From positions 1-8,816 of the IMG/VR virus record IMGVR_UViG_3300005298_000038: a DNA stretch of 8,816 nt; one strand, given 5' to 3'. How positions within the stretch are numbered: position 1 is the stretch's first letter; every line of letters starts with the position of its first letter. Below are positions 1-7,526 of the stretch, piece by piece. The notes under the pieces are model-generated. The model was not told the origin of the DNA, did no database searches, and saw nothing but the letters and a program-made list of their open reading frames with translations. The translations under genes and the position numbers were made by a program.

Positions 1-464
1 AAGGCACTACCGCTACATTCGACATGGTTAATCCCCGCGACTTGATGCAAAAGGAAAATCCCATTAAAGGGAATTGAAAGACATAAGTGGCAGAGATGGC
101 AGACTGAACGTCAGAGGGAACGATGCAAAAGGAAAATCCCATTAAAGGGGATTGAAAGATGTGAATACTCTGATGATTAGTTTGGTGCTGTTTGGTGTGA
201 GATGCAAAAGGAAAATCCCATTAAAGGGAATTGAAAGGCGTACTGCAAGGACGCTATTGCGATTTTAAATGCTCTCCCGATGCAAAAGGAAAATCCCATT
301 AAAGGGAATTGAAAGTTTCTTCGCGTCTCCGGCGCCATTTAGCTGAGTACCGATGCAAAAGGAAAATCCCATTAAAGGGAATTGAAAGCTATCATTCATA
401 ATAGCCACCCTGTTGGAAAAATTTATTGATGCAAAAGGAAAATCCCATTAAAGGGAATTGAAAG
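1..464 (+). CRISPR. CRISPR array, 37-bp repeat GATGCAAAAGGAAAATCCCATTAAAGGGAATTGAAAG (continues off the left edge)
   Basis: Repeats at 44-80, 122-158 (one A>G at 150), 201-237, 279-315, 352-388 and 428-464, plus a probable repeat end (AAG) at 1-3. Unique spacers of 40, 41, 42, 41, 36 and 39 bp. The 3' ATTGAAAG end and internal TCCC/GGGA hairpin are typical of archaeal class 1 arrays and suggest + orientation. Confidence 0.98.
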
Positions 465-1036
465 ACAGCTAGTTTGTTGAAGATTTCGTAAGCTAAGTCT
501 TCGCCTTTGCGGTAACTGCTGTGTAGCATCCAAGTTTGTATTAGCTTCTTTTTGTTTTTTGTTTTGTAATCAAATAAAAGTTTGAACGTTGACGGTTTGG
601 TTGCTTTTGAATCTATCCATTCTTCCGTAACGCCGTGGGGTACAACGTGGACTGGAACTTTGACTCCAGAGTTCAGATAGGATTTTTGGGCAAAATATGA
701 TGGCACTATTATGGCTGTTGCGTAGTCTGTTAGTTTAACCGCATATTCTGTTAGGTGATCTGAGTCTGCAACGTCTACGCCTATAAGCCTTTCAGGCTTG
801 CCTATTTTCGCTAAAAGTCTCCTTTCATAAACTTGCACTGGGTAGAAGTAAGGGTGTAGAAAAAAGACGGCTTTGGTTGAAAGCTGGGCTATTGGCATTA
901 TAACCGTTAAGGCGTTTTCATCAACCTTTTGCACGTAGAAGTATTTGCTTAATTCTTTTATGTGATGCTCTGAGATGAAGTGCCAGCTTACCCATTTATT
1001 TAAGGGGTAAACGTAGAATATGGGGTGTAACGGCAT
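392..1036 (-). CDS. Viral GT4/GT-B glycosyltransferase, C-terminally truncated by the CRISPR array (genuine part 1036-465)
   Basis: Motifs recalled from rudiviral glycosyltransferases: YVYP..VS..F....HIK.L, HP.FY, GVDVADSD, NSG.KVP, HS..RKG.DL. The last ~23 aa (FQFPLMGFSFCINK...) are the reverse-translated repeat 6 and spacer. The C-terminal E-x7-E nucleotide-sugar motif is missing. Confidence 0.85.
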   Translation of the reverse strand: MPLHPIFYVYPLNKWVSWHFISEHHIKELSKYFYVQKVDENALTVIMPIAQLSTKAVFFLHPYFYPVQVYERRLLAKIGKPERLIGVDVADSDHLTEYAVKLTDYATAIIVPSYFAQKSYLNSGVKVPVHVVPHGVTEEWIDSKATKPSTFKLLFDYKTKNKKKLIQTWMLHSSYRKGEDLAYEIFNKLAVFQFPLMGFSFCINKFFQQGGYYE

Positions 1037-1046
1037 ATCATGTCGT

Positions 1047-1061
1047 ATAAAAAAATGGGGG
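1047..1061 (-). terminator. Putative oligo-T terminator downstream of the MCP1 gene
   Basis: Minus strand CCCCCATTTTTTT about 30-45 nt after the MCP1 stop; archaeal U-tract type. A TTTAAA at 1063-1068 may be the TATA box of a leaderless GT transcript. Confidence 0.45.
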
Positions 1062-1091: not shown

Positions 1092-1469
1092 TTATGGCGT
1101 TGCAACGACTTTAACTATGATGGCGTTAGCGATGTCTGTAAGGTAGCCCTCGTCTAAGCCATAAGCGTTCTTAAAGTAGGCAATGAGTCCAGTGGAGATG
1201 TTGTCTGAGGCTACTCCGCCTTGACGCATTACATGCTTCCAAAGCTTAAGTGCGAAGGCGAGGTATGTCGCCCTTGTACCGCCTGTTACGCCTTTAGCGT
1301 CTAGGTAATCTCTCACCATGGCTCTGATGGTGTCGACAGCGTTTAAGCCTGCTTGGGCACGGGCTAGAGCGACTGATTGAACATCGGTGAACCTTGTACC
1401 TACTACTGTTGGGTTGTATTTCGCCTGATATTTCTGAAACATGTCAATGCCAGACTTATACAACGGCAT
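1092..1469 (-). CDS. Major capsid protein 1, SIRV2-like fold
   Basis: 125 aa. KYQAKYNPTV...KGVTGGTRATYLAFALKL...GLIAYFKNAYGLD..YL matches the recalled SIRV coat-protein pattern KWQAKF...NPTV...YGITGPNRAIYQGFGLK...GLKGYYISAFNAN..VL. Has an AGGTGA RBS (1476-1481) and its own TATA box. Confidence 0.9.
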   Translation of the reverse strand: MPLYKSGIDMFQKYQAKYNPTVVGTRFTDVQSVALARAQAGLNAVDTIRAMVRDYLDAKGVTGGTRATYLAFALKLWKHVMRQGGVASDNISTGLIAYFKNAYGLDEGYLTDIANAIIVKVVATP

Positions 1470-1652
1470 ACAATTTCACCTATTCTTTTCTACGCATGTA
1501 TATTGATATGATATTGTTCATAAAGGTTTGGCAAGGGGAAGGAAGCATATAGCTAAAGTATTCCATGATCATGGCTAACATCTTTAGTTATTTATGATTT
1601 GTGTAAAGCTTCGAAATCATTATATAGATGATTGTTTTAAGAATGGTTTGGC
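1470..1652. promoter_or_regulatory. Divergent promoter region between the two capsid genes
   Basis: Minus-strand BRE/TATA-like AAACCTTTATGAA at 1517-1529. Plus-strand TTATATA at 1620-1626, ~27 nt before ATG 1653 (leaderless), inside the inverted repeat AATCAT-N7-ATGATT. Central palindrome CCATGATCATGG at 1563-1574. Confidence 0.65.
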
Positions 1653-2108
1653 ATGACTGTTATAAAGTCTGAAGAGTTAAGTCTGAAAAAGCTGGTTGCA
1701 AGGTCTAATCCAACTACTTTAAGCGCTATTATTGCGGATTCTACTGAGGTGAAGCTTAAAAAGATGAGCGCTTGGGTTAGGATTTGCTACAGGCTGAACA
1801 GGGCTGTTAAACCTATTGTTGATAAGCATGGCATAACAGGGATGATAAGGGTGGGCTACTATGACTATTCTAAGTCTCTTTGGAAGTTTTTGACCAAGTA
1901 TCCTGAAAGTGTTTGGGATAGGTATATTAAGGCTAAGTTTGATTATTATGTGCAGGCGCATCAGCTTAATCCAGAGGTTTTGAAGGAAGTTACAGACGTA
2001 ACAGTTAAAACTATCAAGGAGATACTTAGTGAGGTGGGGGTGGAAAAGGTTGGGGGCGAGGAAACTGGAGATAGTGGTGCCAGCGAGGTTGTGGGAGAAA
2101 CTGAGTGA
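1653..2108 (+). CDS. Second SIRV2-fold capsid protein paralog (MCP2)
   Basis: Shares with MCP1 the motifs NPT, G[VI]TGxxRxxYxx[FY]xxxLWK and Y[FY]xxAxxL[DN]xxxLx[DE][IV]. Acidic C-terminal tail overlaps the next gene. Confidence 0.8.
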   Translation: MTVIKSEELSLKKLVARSNPTTLSAIIADSTEVKLKKMSAWVRICYRLNRAVKPIVDKHGITGMIRVGYYDYSKSLWKFLTKYPESVWDRYIKAKFDYYVQAHQLNPEVLKEVTDVTVKTIKEILSEVGVEKVGGEETGDSGASEVVGETE

Positions 2109-2223
2109 TTTTGAGGCTAAAACAGGTGTGCGTAAAGAAGATATATTGATGCGTGCAGTTATCAATATTATTGAAGGTGTGAGATGCCCGAAGTGTGGAA
2201 GCGTGTTTAGGGAGTTTGAGTAG
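2050..2223 (+). CDS. Ribbon-helix-helix DNA-binding protein with C-terminal CxxC
   Basis: RKLEIVVPARLWEKL...TGVRKEDILMRAVINII is a CopG-like strand-helix-helix pattern, followed by CPKC. Probable TTG start at 2050 after GGGGTGG; the ORF is open from 2029. Confidence 0.7.
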   Translation: MGARKLEIVVPARLWEKLSDFEAKTGVRKEDILMRAVINIIEGVRCPKCGSVFREFE

Positions 2224-2224
2224 G

Positions 2225-2530
2225 ATGAGTCTGTCTCAGAAGGTTTTAGCCCTTGTAGCTGGAATTGACAACCCGAAAGTAAGGTTCGACATAATGTCCA
2301 CCGTAAACTTCCTTTTCAATTTGTTTATAAGCGGAAGGGTTAATGAAGAACAGCTTAGAGGCGACCTGTTCGAAATTTGCTTAAGTGTGCTTACAGAATC
2401 TTCCCCAGAGTTGACAGAGGAAGAGATTAGAAAGAGAGCCAGCATGTTAGCTGATGAGCTTGTTAGAACCATGAAAATTGAAGGTGTTTCAAAAAGGGCA
2501 CTGGCAAGGTTTGCAAGACTGCCGTTCTAG
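2225..2530 (+). CDS. Hypothetical alpha-helical viral protein (101 aa)
   Basis: ATG at 2225 directly follows the upstream stop (TAG-G-ATG). Protein-like amphipathic helices. Ends convergent with the minus-strand operon. Confidence 0.75.
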   Translation: MSLSQKVLALVAGIDNPKVRFDIMSTVNFLFNLFISGRVNEEQLRGDLFEICLSVLTESSPELTEEEIRKRASMLADELVRTMKIEGVSKRALARFARLPF

Positions 2531-2753: not shown

Positions 2754-3053
2754 TTAAACACCGATGAACTGGTATTTTCTGCCGTCTTTTTTCATGTAGG
2801 CTACTGCTTTACATGTGTAGGTTCCTTCCAAGGCTTTTAGCTCCTTGAAACGCTGTTGAAGTTTGGATGTGTCTTTTGGCGCCTCTTCCTTTTTGCATTG
2901 AACCAGCCAGATTTCTCTGCGGTCTGGGAATATGGCGATTAGGTCTGCTGGGGACAGGCTTCTGGCTGAGCGGACAACTATGGCGGCTCCTTGTTTCAGA
3001 AGCTCGTCTTTAGCTTTTAACTCTATGAAATAGCCAGTCTTATACTTGCTCAA
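2754..3053 (-). CDS. hjc: Archaeal-type Holliday junction resolvase (Hjc family, PD-(D/E)xK)
   Basis: G..IE.K....L...G...VVRSA.S.SPADLIAI......LVQCK matches the Hjc pattern, with Q in the E-x-K position. Rudiviruses are known to encode Hjc-type resolvases. Confidence 0.85.
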   Translation of the reverse strand: MSKYKTGYFIELKAKDELLKQGAAIVVRSARSLSPADLIAIFPDRREIWLVQCKKEEAPKDTSKLQQRFKELKALEGTYTCKAVAYMKKDGRKYQFIGV

Positions 3054-3774
3054 GGTTTATCCCTCTGAGGTTTTTCCCTTTGACTTGTATTCCGCTTGCC
3101 TTTAGTAATCTGATTAGGCGGGTTGTTTGTTCTAGACTTGGTTCGGGAAGTTGTATTAGGTTGGGTTTGCTGTTATAGCCTATCCATACGTATTCTGGTT
3201 CTGTTTCAGTTATCATTTTGAAGAATGGGTCTAAATCAAAATCTAGTATTGGTTCTATAGTTATGACTTTACGTGGAAATATTATCTCTTTGAAGGCTTT
3301 ATGTCTTCTTGTCGGTGGAGGTGCACGTGATATAGCTCTATAATTATCATCTCTATTGGTCTCCAACGTTTCTATTATTATCGCATTATCAACCCCATCG
3401 TTAATAATTTCTGGGACACTTCTTGGACTTGTTGTTGATAGTGTTTCCCAATCTTTACTTTGAAAATAGAACACCTTATCTGAGCAACGTTTTTGATGCA
3501 TTGAAATATAATGAATAATTTTACACATATAACCTAGTGAACAAAAAGCTATGTCTCCGTCTCCACATACGAAAACTATTTTTGAACTAGGAATTCTTTT
3601 AAGCCTTTCAGGATGATAATGCGGAGTGTAATTGTAACAGTCTATGCAATTATGTTTACCCCATCTTTTAAGCTGTCTTTGGAATGAAACTTTACAGTAA
3701 ATACAATCGTGATAGCATCCTACATAAGGATTCCACGTTTTAGTTTCAGCGTACATATGGGTTCTGGTTTGCAT
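3040..3774 (-). CDS. DUF5131 (phage Gp37/Gp68)-like radical-SAM protein
   Basis: TWNPYVGCYHDCIYC (CxxxCxxC), VFVCGDGD, FYFQSK, TIEPIL and VWIGYNS correspond in order to the conserved blocks of DUF5131-like proteins. Confidence 0.75.
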   Translation of the reverse strand: MQTRTHMYAETKTWNPYVGCYHDCIYCKVSFQRQLKRWGKHNCIDCYNYTPHYHPERLKRIPSSKIVFVCGDGDIAFCSLGYMCKIIHYISMHQKRCSDKVFYFQSKDWETLSTTSPRSVPEIINDGVDNAIIIETLETNRDDNYRAISRAPPPTRRHKAFKEIIFPRKVITIEPILDFDLDPFFKMITETEPEYVWIGYNSKPNLIQLPEPSLEQTTRLIRLLKASGIQVKGKNLRGINLEQV

Positions 3775-7253: not shown

Positions 7254-7526
7254 ATGGTTTGGGAAGTTGTGAGGGGAATACTCGCTGGGATAGTTTCAGG
7301 GGCTGTTACGGCGTTGCTGGGATACGCCAAGACGGGCGGATTGGAAAGCTTTGAACCCAAAAAGGCTGTTCAAACGATCATAGTGGGTGCGGTAGTGGGC
7401 GGTTTCGCTGGAGCTTGGGGTGTAACGTATCAGGAAGCCTACGAATACCTCGGGAGCGTTGGCGCTATAACTTTGATTGAATATGTTAAGAAGTCCATCG
7501 TGAAGAGGCTGTTTCCGCCAGAATAA
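7254..7526 (+). CDS. Small Gly-rich membrane protein (holin-like or virion envelope candidate)
   Basis: 2-3 hydrophobic helices with GxxxG motifs (GILAGIVSG, GAVVGGFAG) and a basic C-terminus. GAGGTGG RBS, own promoter and T-rich terminator. Confidence 0.75.
   Translation: MVWEVVRGILAGIVSGAVTALLGYAKTGGLESFEPKKAVQTIIVGAVVGGFAGAWGVTYQEAYEYLGSVGAITLIEYVKKSIVKRLFPPE

What the first reader, a model, noticed from the sequence alone, without database searches (positions are those of the whole stretch)
1092..2108. Two SIRV2-fold capsid paralogs arranged head-to-head and separately controlled
Seen: both proteins share NPT, G[VI]TGxxRxxYxx[FY]xxxLWK and the C-terminal helix motif, yet they are divergently transcribed. 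MCP1 has an RBS and a terminator. MCP2 looks leaderless and co-transcribed with an RHH gene and a helical protein. Known: rudiviruses use one MCP as a homodimer, while lipothrixviruses and tristromaviruses use MCP1/MCP2 heterodimers, to my knowledge from co-oriented adjacent genes. Inference: a distinct adnavirus lineage, or a paralog repurposed as a minor, terminal or non-structural DNA-binding protein.
Basis: partly seen in the sequence, partly recalled or inferred. Interest (0 to 1): 0.75.

Follow-up and report, generated by a model that had tools for sequence, protein, structure and literature searches.

The report
Head-to-head capsid-gene pair, archaeal rod virus
Two divergently transcribed copies of the rod-virus coat-protein gene really are here, but the layout is typical of a hot-spring archaeal virus group already outlined in a 2025 preprint; what is new is that the second copy is intact yet varies far more than the first, so it is probably not an equal building block of the virus shell.

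Summary
ORFs 1092-1469(-) (MCP-A, 125 aa) and 1653-2108(+) (MCP-B, 151 aa) both pass Pfam PF12193. They align without gaps (E 2e-10). The MCP-B model matches SIRV2, SSRV1 and AFV1 coat structures.

The window is the whole contig IMGVR_UViG_3300005298_000038. A relative whose MCP-A is 76% identical is listed as 'Demeterviridae' in bioRxiv 10.1101/2025.08.23.671958. That paper's gene table already shows the same -/+ coat-gene pair next to a glycosyltransferase. In my survey, 43 of 75 related loci with a usable divergent ORF (91 survey loci in all) carry an MCP-B-type gene head-to-head with MCP-A.

Each gene has its own conserved TATA box. MCP-A also has a GGTGA ribosome-binding site and a T7 run. 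MCP-B appears leaderless and heads an overlapping three-gene unit.

MCP-B is under purifying selection (dN/dS 0.19-0.41) and keeps a basic N-terminal arm. It is hypervariable, however: it is 59% identical where MCP-A is 98%, and under 30% where MCP-A is 81%. True heterodimer partners (SIFV0035/0036) diverge equally.

My best reading is that MCP-A builds the shell as in rudiviruses and MCP-B is an accessory DNA-binding or minor virion protein. A lipothrixvirus-style heterodimer is not excluded.

Separately, a CRISPR array at 44-464 abuts a truncated glycosyltransferase, which is probably an assembly chimera.

The parts
1092..1469 (-). MCP-A: the conserved, rudivirus-like major capsid protein gene (125 aa)
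   Evidence: PF12193 at 62.1 bits. 32-35% identical to rudivirus coat proteins. Its profile hits the SSRV1 structure 6wq0 at E 4.8e-16 and SIRV2 3j9x at 4.3e-15. 54-98% identical across 80+ related loci. dN/dS 0.03-0.15.
1470..1652 (.). 183-nt divergent control region. It holds the MCP-A Shine-Dalgarno GGTGA (1476-1480), the MCP-A TATA-like box (about 1519-1526, minus strand) and the MCP-B TATA box TTATATAG (1620-1627).
   Evidence: The length is exactly 183 nt in the window, L002, L007 and L009. TTTCACC, TTTAAAG and GATTATATAG are conserved in the alignment of relatives. The roles as promoters are inferred from the known spacing of archaeal TATA boxes, not measured.
1653..2108 (+). MCP-B: a diverged full-length SIRV2-fold paralog (151 aa). 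It has a basic N-terminal arm (net +7), a helical-bundle core and an acidic disordered tail (129-151, net -6).
   Evidence: PF12193 at 49.3 bits. AlphaFold2 core pLDDT 85-92. The top 8 Foldseek PDB hits are all adnavirus coat proteins: 3j9x, 6wq0, 3fbz, 3fbl, 3f2e and 5w7g. Charges are. dN/dS 0.19-0.41. Hypervariable between relatives.
2050..2223 (+). Small ORF overlapping the MCP-B 3' end (alternative start GTG 2029). It has an RHH-like beta-alpha-alpha pattern plus a CPxCG half zinc ribbon.
   Evidence: Conserved in this position in 40+ relatives. Only weak zinc-ribbon hits were found. The RHH assignment is not statistically supported.
2225..2530 (+). Conserved 101-aa four-helix protein, the last gene of the inferred MCP-B transcription unit
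   Evidence: Its ATG lies one base after the preceding stop. About 50 distinct homologues were found in relatives, including the vent clade, and 37 were aligned. AlphaFold2 pLDDT 88.7 with four helices. No informative PDB fold match, best E 1.2. No Pfam family.
1049..1055 (-). T7 run downstream of MCP-A, terminator-like. It lies between a TTTAAAT box and the glycosyltransferase ATG.
   Evidence: A run of T5 or longer (mostly T6-T8), preceded in most relatives by a C-rich stretch, is conserved in 11 relatives. Function is inferred.
466..1036 (-). N-terminal half (about 190 of about 360 residues) of the glycosyltransferase that follows MCP-A in all close relatives and in rudiviruses
   Evidence: PHROG 2170 glycosyltransferase, covering profile positions 7-205 of 374. 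65-74% identical over residues 1-189 of the full-length 360-362 aa genes in L002 and L003. Homology stops at the last CRISPR repeat.
44..464 (+). CRISPR array: six 37-nt repeats ending ATTGAAAG, with five spacers of 36-42 nt
   Evidence: It is not part of the capsid-gene pair, but it bears on the integrity of the contig.

Best explanation
The window is a partial genome of an uncultivated rod-shaped archaeal virus (realm Adnaviria). It belongs to the hot-spring clade that a 2025 preprint calls 'Demeterviridae'.

MCP-A is the true major capsid protein. It is close to the homodimer-forming rudivirus MCPs and extremely conserved. It is expressed as its own unit, with a TATA box, a roughly 27-nt leader carrying GGTGA, and a T7 run. 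The glycosyltransferase gene follows it, as in Rudiviridae.

MCP-B is an old duplicate of the coat gene that sits head-to-head with MCP-A. It keeps the whole SIRV2 fold, including a basic N-terminal arm of the kind that wraps DNA in solved virions. It has also gained an acidic, disordered C-terminal tail. It is made from its own TATA box as a leaderless first gene of a three-gene unit, together with a small RHH-like/zinc-ribbon protein and a four-helix protein.

MCP-B varies enormously, and in cassette fashion, between viruses whose MCP-A is nearly the same. It most likely works as an accessory protein that binds DNA or attaches to the capsid: a minor or terminal virion subunit that displays a variable tail, or an intracellular DNA-coating or assembly factor. 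It is probably not the obligate 1:1 partner of MCP-A.

Shown here: fold, paralogy, conserved layout, conserved promoter-like motifs, purifying selection and hypervariability. Inferred: transcription start sites, co-transcription, DNA binding and the accessory role.
For: Fold and paralogy.

Clade membership and prior description.

Layout conserved:
- The metagenome scan found 153 relatives and kept 80 loci; the survey covered 91 loci in all.
- Nearly every locus with room has a divergent ORF upstream of MCP-A.
- Of 75 loci with a usable divergent ORF, 43 are linked to MCP-B by iterative HMM.
- The 183-nt spacer and both TATA-like boxes are conserved.
- The T-run after MCP-A is conserved.

MCP-B is functional: dN/dS is 0.19-0.41, and there are 12 intact close homologues with 40 invariant columns.

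MCP-B is not an equal partner:
- L002 versus L008: MCP-A 98%, RHH-like 89%, helix 86%, but MCP-B 59%. dS is 1.2 for B against 0.37 for A.
- L009 versus L029: MCP-A 86%, MCP-B 20%.
- At 81% MCP-A identity, MCP-B is below 30% while its neighbours stay at 39-68%.
- MCP-B lengths range from 136 to 330 aa, with one SIRV2 domain plus variable tails or N-extensions.
- The vent clade keeps MCP-A at 54-62% identity by the query-length measure (58-65% local tblastn identity) but has an unrelated gene in the divergent slot.
- Yardstick: the known heterodimer partners SIFV0035 and SIFV0036 diverge equally across the same relatives (96/99, 62-66/66-68 and 33/36%) and stay adjacent and co-oriented.

Precedent: the hoswirudivirus second coat paralog sits in the same genomic position and is reported absent from virions (PMC10848311).
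Against: - MCP-B in this window is colinear with MCP-A over 118 residues. It retains the NPT motif and a strongly basic N-terminal arm. That arm's only known role is wrapping DNA together with a partner subunit, and the non-virion hoswirudivirus paralog lacks it.
- Every solved adnavirus with two full-length MCP paralogs uses them as a heterodimer (from my own knowledge of the AFV1, SIFV and PFV2 structures).
- The consensus TATA box and leaderless start are compatible with high expression.
- No homo- or heterodimer modelling, expression data or proteomics were available.
- dS is saturated in many pairs, so the dN/dS values are rough.
- The deep phylogeny is unresolved.
Confidence: 0.55

Rival explanations
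1. Heterodimeric capsomer. MCP-A and MCP-B pair 1:1 and wrap A-form DNA together, as MCP1/MCP2 do in Lipothrixviridae, Ungulaviridae and Tristromaviridae. Only the gene orientation differs.
For: MCP-B is a full-length colinear paralog with an NPT motif and a basic N-arm. It has the SIRV2 fold and is under purifying selection. Its adjacency to MCP-A is conserved in 43 loci. Its promoter is consensus-like. Small membrane proteins are encoded nearby (ORFs 2537-2761 and 7254-7526), as expected for enveloped relatives.
Against: The divergence is strongly asymmetric and cassette-like. This contrasts with the equal divergence of the SIFV0035/0036 partners. Some MCP-B types keep only the C-terminal bundle behind an unrelated N-extension (L003 and L021 types). 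The vent clade has the same MCP-A but no recognisable MCP-B. MCP-A is closest to homodimeric rudivirus MCPs. MCP-B lies in a separate transcription unit with putative regulators.
Confidence: 0.3
2. Decaying duplicate. Only MCP-A is functional and MCP-B has been, or is being, inactivated. The preprint raises this possibility for Demeterviridae.
For: The statement in the discussion of bioRxiv 10.1101/2025.08.23.671958. MCP-B has long branches in the tree.
Against: The ORF is intact in all 12 close homologues and in 43 loci. dN/dS is 0.19-0.41, well below 1. There are 40 invariant columns. The core model is confident. The TATA box and the exact 183-nt spacing are conserved. MCP-B is the first gene of a conserved overlapping operon.
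Confidence: 0.05
3. Conflict protein, a special case of the accessory role. The capsid-fold paralog acts in virus-host or virus-virus conflict. It could be a decoy for a host sensor of coat protein, or a poison subunit that blocks assembly of co-infecting relatives. This would explain why distinct alleles are kept and swapped.
For: Between L002 and L008 the dS of MCP-B (1.2) is three times that of MCP-A (0.37). This points to exchange of old alleles rather than simple rate acceleration. Discrete MCP-B types occur among near-identical MCP-A backgrounds. In 1.84 billion cluster representatives (clusters at 50% identity), only 46 match the MCP-B profile and 19 reach E 1e-10. That is a small family split into many 50% clusters.
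Against: There is no direct evidence for any defence or exclusion activity. No PADLOC or anti-defence search was run. Hypervariability fits a surface or terminal adaptor equally well. dS is saturated.
Confidence: 0.15

Closest known systems
'Demeterviridae' (proposed in bioRxiv 10.1101/2025.08.23.671958): rod-shaped viruses linked to Ca. Caldarchaeales by CRISPR spacers
   Same: The member contig 3300005573_000154 (L003) shares several genes with the window: MCP-A 76%, glycosyltransferase 65%, RHH-like 64%, nuclease-like 54%, ORF145 49% and ORF176 39%. Its gene table lists a coat-like gene on strand -1 directly before the PF12193 coat gene on strand +1, then the glycosyltransferase. The text notes two adjacent coat copies next to a glycosyltransferase.
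   Different: The window's own contig id is not found in the held (truncated) supplement. L003's divergent gene is a different MCP-B type: 221 aa with an N-extension and about 10-19% identity. The preprint does not discuss orientation, promoters, selection or hypervariability, and it speculates that one copy is inactivated.
Second coat paralog of Hoswirudivirus (Rudiviridae): SSRV1 gp10, MRV1 gp09 and the ARV2 homologue
   Same: It is a SIRV2-fold paralog immediately upstream of the MCP gene, with the glycosyltransferase downstream. It is the best BFVD structural match of MCP-B. It is reported not to be in virions (PMC10848311).
   Different: It is co-oriented with the MCP, not divergent. It is only 107-108 aa and aligns only to the C-terminal bundle (MCP-B residues 39-116), so it lacks the N-terminal arm. 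It forms its own clade in the tree (100/100).
MCP1/MCP2 heterodimers of Lipothrixviridae (SIFV0035/0036), Ungulaviridae (AFV1 ORF132/ORF140) and Tristromaviridae
   Same: There are two full-length SIRV2-fold paralogs encoded side by side. The MCP-B model matches AFV1 ORF140 and ORF132 structures.
   Different: Their genes are co-oriented and abutting, and the two partners diverge at equal rates. Here the genes are head-to-head with separate promoters, and MCP-B diverges several-fold faster. By sequence, MCP-A is nearer to rudivirus MCPs than to these.
Chiyouviridae (Bathyarchaeia rod virus, PMC10848311)
   Same: It is a hot-spring adnavirus with two MCP genes and virus-borne mini-CRISPR arrays.
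   Different: Its MCP genes (14 and 23) are not adjacent. Its arrays have four repeats each. No sequence link to the window was tested beyond searching for the window's and three relatives' sample ids, none of which is tied to Chiyouvirus there.

Membership tests
SIRV2-fold adnavirus coat protein (Pfam PF12193 Sulf_coat_C) | Sequence match above the curated Pfam threshold | tested here: met
   MCP-A scores 62.1 bits and MCP-B 49.3 bits against a cut-off of 25.2.
SIRV2-fold adnavirus coat protein (Pfam PF12193 Sulf_coat_C) | C-terminal helical bundle superposable on solved coat proteins | tested here: met
   MCP-B model: 3f2e TM 0.80 at rmsd 2.2 A, 3fbl TM 0.78 at rmsd 1.8 A, 3j9x and 6wq0 probability 1.00. 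MCP-A was tested by sequence only: E 4.8e-16 to 6wq0.
SIRV2-fold adnavirus coat protein (Pfam PF12193 Sulf_coat_C) | N-terminal arm that becomes helical and wraps A-form DNA in the virion | not testable with these tools
   Both proteins have a colinear N-terminal segment of about 58 residues with an NPT motif. Net charge is +2 for MCP-A and +7 for MCP-B. DNA wrapping itself needs experiment or a complex model.
'Demeterviridae' (preprint proposal) | Proteome-level clustering with named members | tested here: inconclusive
   Six or seven shared syntenic genes with member L003 at 39-76% identity. The formal proteome-tree or vConTACT criterion was not run. The window is only 8.8 kb of a genome of roughly 26-41 kb.
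'Demeterviridae' (preprint proposal) | Ca. Caldarchaeales host (CRISPR spacer match) | tested here: inconclusive
   The CRISPR repeat attached to the contig was not found exactly in GTDB representative genomes. A shortened pattern hit one unrelated MAG without an array.
Heterodimeric MCP1/MCP2 capsomer (lipothrixvirus type) | Two full-length paralogs | tested here: met
Heterodimeric MCP1/MCP2 capsomer (lipothrixvirus type) | Partners encoded as adjacent co-oriented genes and evolving at matched rates | tested here: not met
   Here the genes are head-to-head. Identity is 98% for MCP-A against 59% for MCP-B, and 86% against 20%. The SIFV partners show 96/99, 62-66/66-68 and 33/36%. This is an empirical regularity, not a formal definition.
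Heterodimeric MCP1/MCP2 capsomer (lipothrixvirus type) | Both proteins present about 1:1 in virions | not testable with these tools
   There is no isolate. Only a single-chain predictor was available.
Hoswirudivirus-type second coat paralog | Short (about 108 aa) bundle-only paralog, co-oriented upstream of the MCP | tested here: not met
   MCP-B is 151 aa with an N-arm and is divergent. hhalign aligns gp10 only to MCP-B residues 39-116.
Ribbon-helix-helix regulator (ORF 2050-2223) | Significant match to an RHH family or structure | tested here: inconclusive
   No RHH Pfam hit in 28 members. No PDB hit. hhalign against the SIRV3 CopG-like repressor aligns in the expected register, but at E 0.051 and probability 1%.
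CRISPR array (44-464) | Regularly spaced identical repeats with unique spacers of similar length | tested here: met
   Six 37-nt repeats (one with a G/A change) and spacers of 36-42 nt. There are no cas genes in the window.

The most novel reading that the evidence does not exclude
MCP-B is a swappable, hypervariable capsid-fold module. Distinct old alleles are exchanged between viruses that share almost the same major capsid protein. One possibility is that MCP-B inserts into or caps the nucleoprotein rod and displays a variable tail that matters for host or virus-virus interactions. Another is that it acts as a decoy or poison subunit in such conflicts. Coat domains fused to large proteins elsewhere (a 1022-aa protein, and a 560-aa protein with FG-GAP/beta-propeller repeats) hint that the fold is used as an anchoring module.
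Probability: 0.25. Interest if true: 0.7.

Novelty: new member of a known kind. Interest (0 to 1): 0.45.

Why it matters
How filamentous archaeal viruses moved between one-protein (homodimer) and two-protein (heterodimer) shells is an open question in Adnaviria evolution. This clade offers a third state: a full-length second coat paralog that is kept, separately expressed and highly variable.

If MCP-B is a minor or terminal subunit, or a conflict protein, the coat fold has been co-opted for something other than bulk DNA packaging. If instead it is a true partner, heterodimers would tolerate far more one-sided divergence than the known families suggest.

In practice, the result corrects the idea that the second copy is dead. 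It also gives roughly 90 loci on which to test these ideas.

Tried and rejected
- tblastn of both MCPs against the phage collection found only rudivirus coat proteins, with no lipothrixvirus or tristromavirus hits.
- A viral-contig scan with MCP-B found only the window itself.
- A maximum-likelihood tree of 59 MCP-A, MCP-B, rudivirus, hoswirudivirus-paralog and AFV1 sequences left all deep nodes open. The timing of the duplication, and any link to the hoswirudivirus paralog, therefore stay unresolved.
- The AFV1 MCPs gave no relatives to use as a rate yardstick. The SIFV pair was used instead.
- The vent-clade divergent ORFs show no profile similarity to MCPs (hhalign probability below 5%), so I do not claim a hidden MCP there.
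- The gene divergent from the MCP in SIRV3 (gp18) is not MCP-like.
- The 330-aa and 279-aa MCP-B variants are not double-MCP fusions. Each has one coat domain plus a long tail.
- The 438-aa protein beyond the glycosyltransferase in relatives, which the preprint labels lipothrixvirus-like by HHpred, gave no PDB sequence hit with phmmer.
- The helical protein has no fold match.
- RHH tests were all non-significant.
- The 99-aa ORF at 2754-3053 looks like a Holliday-junction-resolvase/nuclease by eye, but only a weak nuclease hit was obtained (E 0.4). The 244-aa ORF shows only a CxxxCxxC radical-SAM-like N-terminus.
- The exact CRISPR repeat is absent from the genome collection, and no spacer matches any fetched locus.
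- The direct repeat D2 (1501-1533 and 1621-1653) is only partly conserved in relatives. I treat it as unexplained and probably chance.
- The sigma-70 promoter scanner was not used because it does not apply to archaea.
Full report
**What is in the window.** The window is the complete 8816-bp contig IMGVR_UViG_3300005298_000038. According to a preprint's sample table, sample 3300005298 is a 77 C cellulolytic sediment enrichment from Great Boiling Spring, Nevada. ORF 1092..1469(-) encodes 125 aa (MCP-A) and ORF 1653..2108(+) encodes 151 aa (MCP-B). Both exceed the Pfam PF12193 (Sulfolobus virus coat protein) gathering score, with 62.1 and 49.3 bits against a cut-off of 25.2. They align to each other over 118 residues without a gap, at 23% identity and E 2e-10. 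No third coat-like ORF exists in the window.

**Fold.** Profiles of MCP-A (7 sequences) and MCP-B (12 sequences) both find the solved coat proteins of SSRV1 (6wq0) and SIRV2 (3j9x) by sequence. E-values are 4.8e-16 and 4.3e-15 for MCP-A, and 1.9e-6 and 6.7e-6 for MCP-B. An AlphaFold2 model of MCP-B from a 19-sequence alignment has a core pLDDT of 85-92. It shows helices at 7-17, 28-58, 64-80, 85-103 and 107-127, and a disordered tail at 129-151. The eight best Foldseek matches in the PDB are all adnavirus coat proteins: SIRV2, SSRV1, AFV1 ORF140 and ORF132, and the SIRV C-terminal domain. The bundle domain superposes at TM 0.78-0.80 and rmsd 1.8-2.2 A. The best match among predicted viral structures is the second coat paralog of SSRV1.

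**Expression signals.** The two start codons are 183 nt apart and face away from each other. The spacer is exactly 183 nt in the window, L002, L007 and L009, and three motifs are conserved:
- TTTCACC, which is GGTGA on the MCP-A strand, lies 6 nt before the MCP-A ATG.
- A TTTAAAG/ATAAAGG box lies about 50-57 nt upstream of the MCP-A ATG.
- GATTATATAG lies about 26-33 nt upstream of the MCP-B ATG, with no Shine-Dalgarno motif between them.

From the known spacing of archaeal TATA boxes (centred about 26-27 nt before the start site; my own knowledge), MCP-A would have a roughly 27-nt leader with a ribosome-binding site. MCP-B would be leaderless. These are inferences, not measurements.

After MCP-A, a conserved TTTAAAT box, a C-rich stretch (absent in a few relatives) and a T-run (T7 here at 1049-1055) precede the glycosyltransferase ATG. 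MCP-A is therefore probably monocistronic.

The ORF after MCP-B overlaps MCP-B's last 59-80 nt. The next ORF starts one base after that ORF's stop. No run of five or more T lies between 1892 and 2530, and a T-rich stretch follows 2530. A three-gene MCP-B unit is thus likely but not shown.

The middle gene has a beta-alpha-alpha pattern like an RHH protein and a CPxCG motif. Every statistical test of the RHH label was non-significant. The third gene is a confident four-helix protein with no recognisable relatives of known structure.

**Relatives and literature.** The scans returned four viral contigs, three long metagenome contigs carrying MCP-B homologues, and 80 further metagenome loci out of 153 relatives. 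The long contigs show a rudivirus-like order beyond MCP-A: a glycosyltransferase of about 360 aa, sometimes a methyltransferase, a 438-aa protein, and a protein of 1750-1816 aa.

One relative, L003 (contig 3300005573_000154), has MCP-A at 76% identity. The supplement of bioRxiv 10.1101/2025.08.23.671958 lists it as vOTU_0037 of the proposed family 'Demeterviridae', described as rod-shaped viruses assigned to Ca. Caldarchaeales. Its gene table gives gene 44 (strand -1, HHpred 3J9X coat), gene 45 (strand +1, PF12193 coat) and gene 46 (glycosyltransferase). [quoted passage not shown] It adds that perhaps only one copy is structural or functional.

PMC10848311 states that some rudiviruses have a second MCP paralog that is not incorporated into virions. 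I verified the hoswirudivirus layout in SSRV1, MRV1 and ARV2. A 107-108-aa coat paralog lies co-oriented directly upstream of the 134-aa MCP, with the glycosyltransferase downstream. I also verified that AFV1 ORF132/140 and SIFV0035/0036 are adjacent and co-oriented.

**How general the head-to-head layout is.** Nearly every locus with enough upstream sequence has a divergent ORF of 100-330 aa, 30-260 nt upstream of MCP-A. Of 75 loci with a usable divergent ORF (91 survey loci in all), 43 are linked to MCP-B by two rounds of profile search, including the L003 type. The other 32 are mostly from hydrothermal-vent and Guaymas samples, with MCP-A at 54-62% identity by the query-length measure. Of these, 29 carry a different protein family with no profile similarity to coat proteins, and three carry the helix-protein homologue in that slot.

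**Is MCP-B a live gene?** Yes. Twelve close homologues are intact and share 40 invariant columns. Nei-Gojobori dN/dS is 0.19-0.41, against 0.03-0.15 for MCP-A (dS is partly saturated). Its promoter box and spacing are conserved. This argues against the 'inactivated copy' idea.

**Is MCP-B an equal capsomer partner?** The evidence leans against it.
- MCP-A is 73-98% identical among twelve representative viruses, while MCP-B ranges from 2% to 82%.
- L002 and L008 have MCP-A at 98%, the RHH-like gene at 89% and the helix protein at 86%, but MCP-B at only 59%. dS is 1.2 for MCP-B against 0.37 for MCP-A, which suggests exchange of old alleles.
- L009 and L029 have MCP-A at 86% and MCP-B at 20%.
- At 81% MCP-A identity, MCP-B is already below 30%, while the neighbours remain at 39-68%.
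- MCP-B types differ in length (136-330 aa). Each has a single coat domain plus a variable, often acidic, tail or an N-terminal extension. Some types keep only the C-terminal bundle.
- As a yardstick, the two proteins of the known SIFV-type heterodimer diverge in step across the same relatives: 96/99, 62-66/66-68 and 33/36%.

Against this, the window's MCP-B is fully colinear with MCP-A. It keeps the NPT motif and a strongly basic arm (net +7). The non-virion hoswirudivirus paralog lacks that arm altogether. The heterodimer reading therefore stays open at about 0.3.

**Best explanation.** MCP-A builds the rod as in rudiviruses. MCP-B is an accessory protein that binds DNA or attaches to the capsid, with an outward-facing variable tail, expressed separately together with two small proteins. 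I give this 0.55. Its precise role is not determined. Options are a minor or terminal virion subunit, an intracellular DNA coat or assembly factor, or a conflict protein. The tree could not date the duplication or link it to the hoswirudivirus paralog.

**Rarity.** Among 1.84 billion cluster representatives (clusters at 50% identity), only 46 match the MCP-B profile at E 1e-3 or better, and 19 at E 1e-10 or better.

**Contig integrity.** Positions 44-464 hold six 37-nt CRISPR repeats ending ATTGAAAG, with spacers of 36-42 nt. Homology of the glycosyltransferase to its full-length relatives (360-362 aa) stops at residue ~190, exactly at the last repeat. The relatives examined around this gene (L002, L003 and L007-L009) have the full-length gene there, with no array called next to it. 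The simplest reading is an assembly chimera that runs through a host spacer derived from this virus. A real virus-borne array, as reported for Chiyouvirus, is not excluded. The repeat was not found in the genome collection, so it gives no host assignment yet.

**Verdict.** This is a new member of a kind already outlined in a preprint. The added value here is threefold: evidence that the second coat gene is functional, that it is separately controlled, and that it is hypervariable.

Noticed in passing
window 44-464 and 465-1036: A CRISPR array of six 37-nt repeats (GATGCAAAAGGAAAATCCCATTAAAGGGAATTGAAAG) directly abuts a glycosyltransferase gene cut at residue ~190 of ~360. This is probably an assembly chimera through a spacer, which would link the virus to the host carrying this repeat. 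Alternatively it is a virus-borne array. No spacer matches any fetched relative.
   Followed up: partly
window 2029-2108: The acidic Gly/Ser/Glu tail of MCP-B is encoded in the same DNA as the N-terminus (including the beta-strand) of the next ORF, in another frame. Part of the tail's conservation may therefore come from the overlapping gene, or the tail may have arisen by read-through into it.
   Followed up: no
window 1501-1533 and 1621-1653: A 33-nt direct repeat (73% identity) lies in the divergent control region. Both copies end in GGTTTGGCA. The first spans the MCP-A TATA-like box and the second ends at the MCP-B ATG. It is only partly conserved in relatives, so it may be an operator pair or chance.
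   Followed up: partly
L004, L052-L086 (vent and Guaymas clade), divergent slot upstream of MCP-A: In the deep-sea vent relatives, the gene head-to-head with MCP-A is an unrelated 120-200-aa family. It has a segment (L.I.IPEELW.KLAKLRK) that resembles the RHH-like gene of the window, plus an acidic tail. Many of these loci lack a separate RHH-like ORF.
   Followed up: partly
P0046 (L099:6001-9069) and P0053: PF12193 coat domains occur fused to large proteins. One is a 1022-aa protein with the coat domain at its C-terminus. The other is a 560-aa protein with an N-terminal coat domain followed by FG-GAP/beta-propeller repeats. The coat fold may therefore serve as an anchoring module.
   Followed up: partly
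L041/L042:2750-3742(-) and L035:2523-3362(-): These MCP-B variants of 330 and 279 aa have one N-terminal coat domain followed by a ~150-200-residue low-complexity, partly acidic region. The 330-aa variant ends in a basic AT-hook-like GRKRGRPPGS motif.
   Followed up: partly
BFVD entry Q50I53 (Acidianus rod-shaped virus 1, 124 aa): An uncharacterised ARV1 protein is the second-best structural match of the MCP-B model (probability 1.00). ARV1 may therefore carry an unannotated coat-fold paralog outside the Hoswirudivirus genus.
   Followed up: no
window 2754-3053(-), 3040-3774(-): A 99-aa ORF has a PD-(D/E)xK/Holliday-junction-resolvase-like pattern and is conserved in relatives, but its best database hit is weak (nuclease 4qbn, E 0.4). 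A 244-aa ORF has a CxxxCxxC radical-SAM-like N-terminus, with only sub-threshold hits.
   Followed up: partly
supplement file 5 of bioRxiv 10.1101/2025.08.23.671958, rows for contig 3300005573_000154: The annotation '6JHZ_B CRISPR-associated endoribonuclease Cas2' is repeated on five neighbouring genes (29-32 consecutive, plus gene 3) of very different sizes. It looks like a fill-down error, so that table's labels need care.
   Followed up: no
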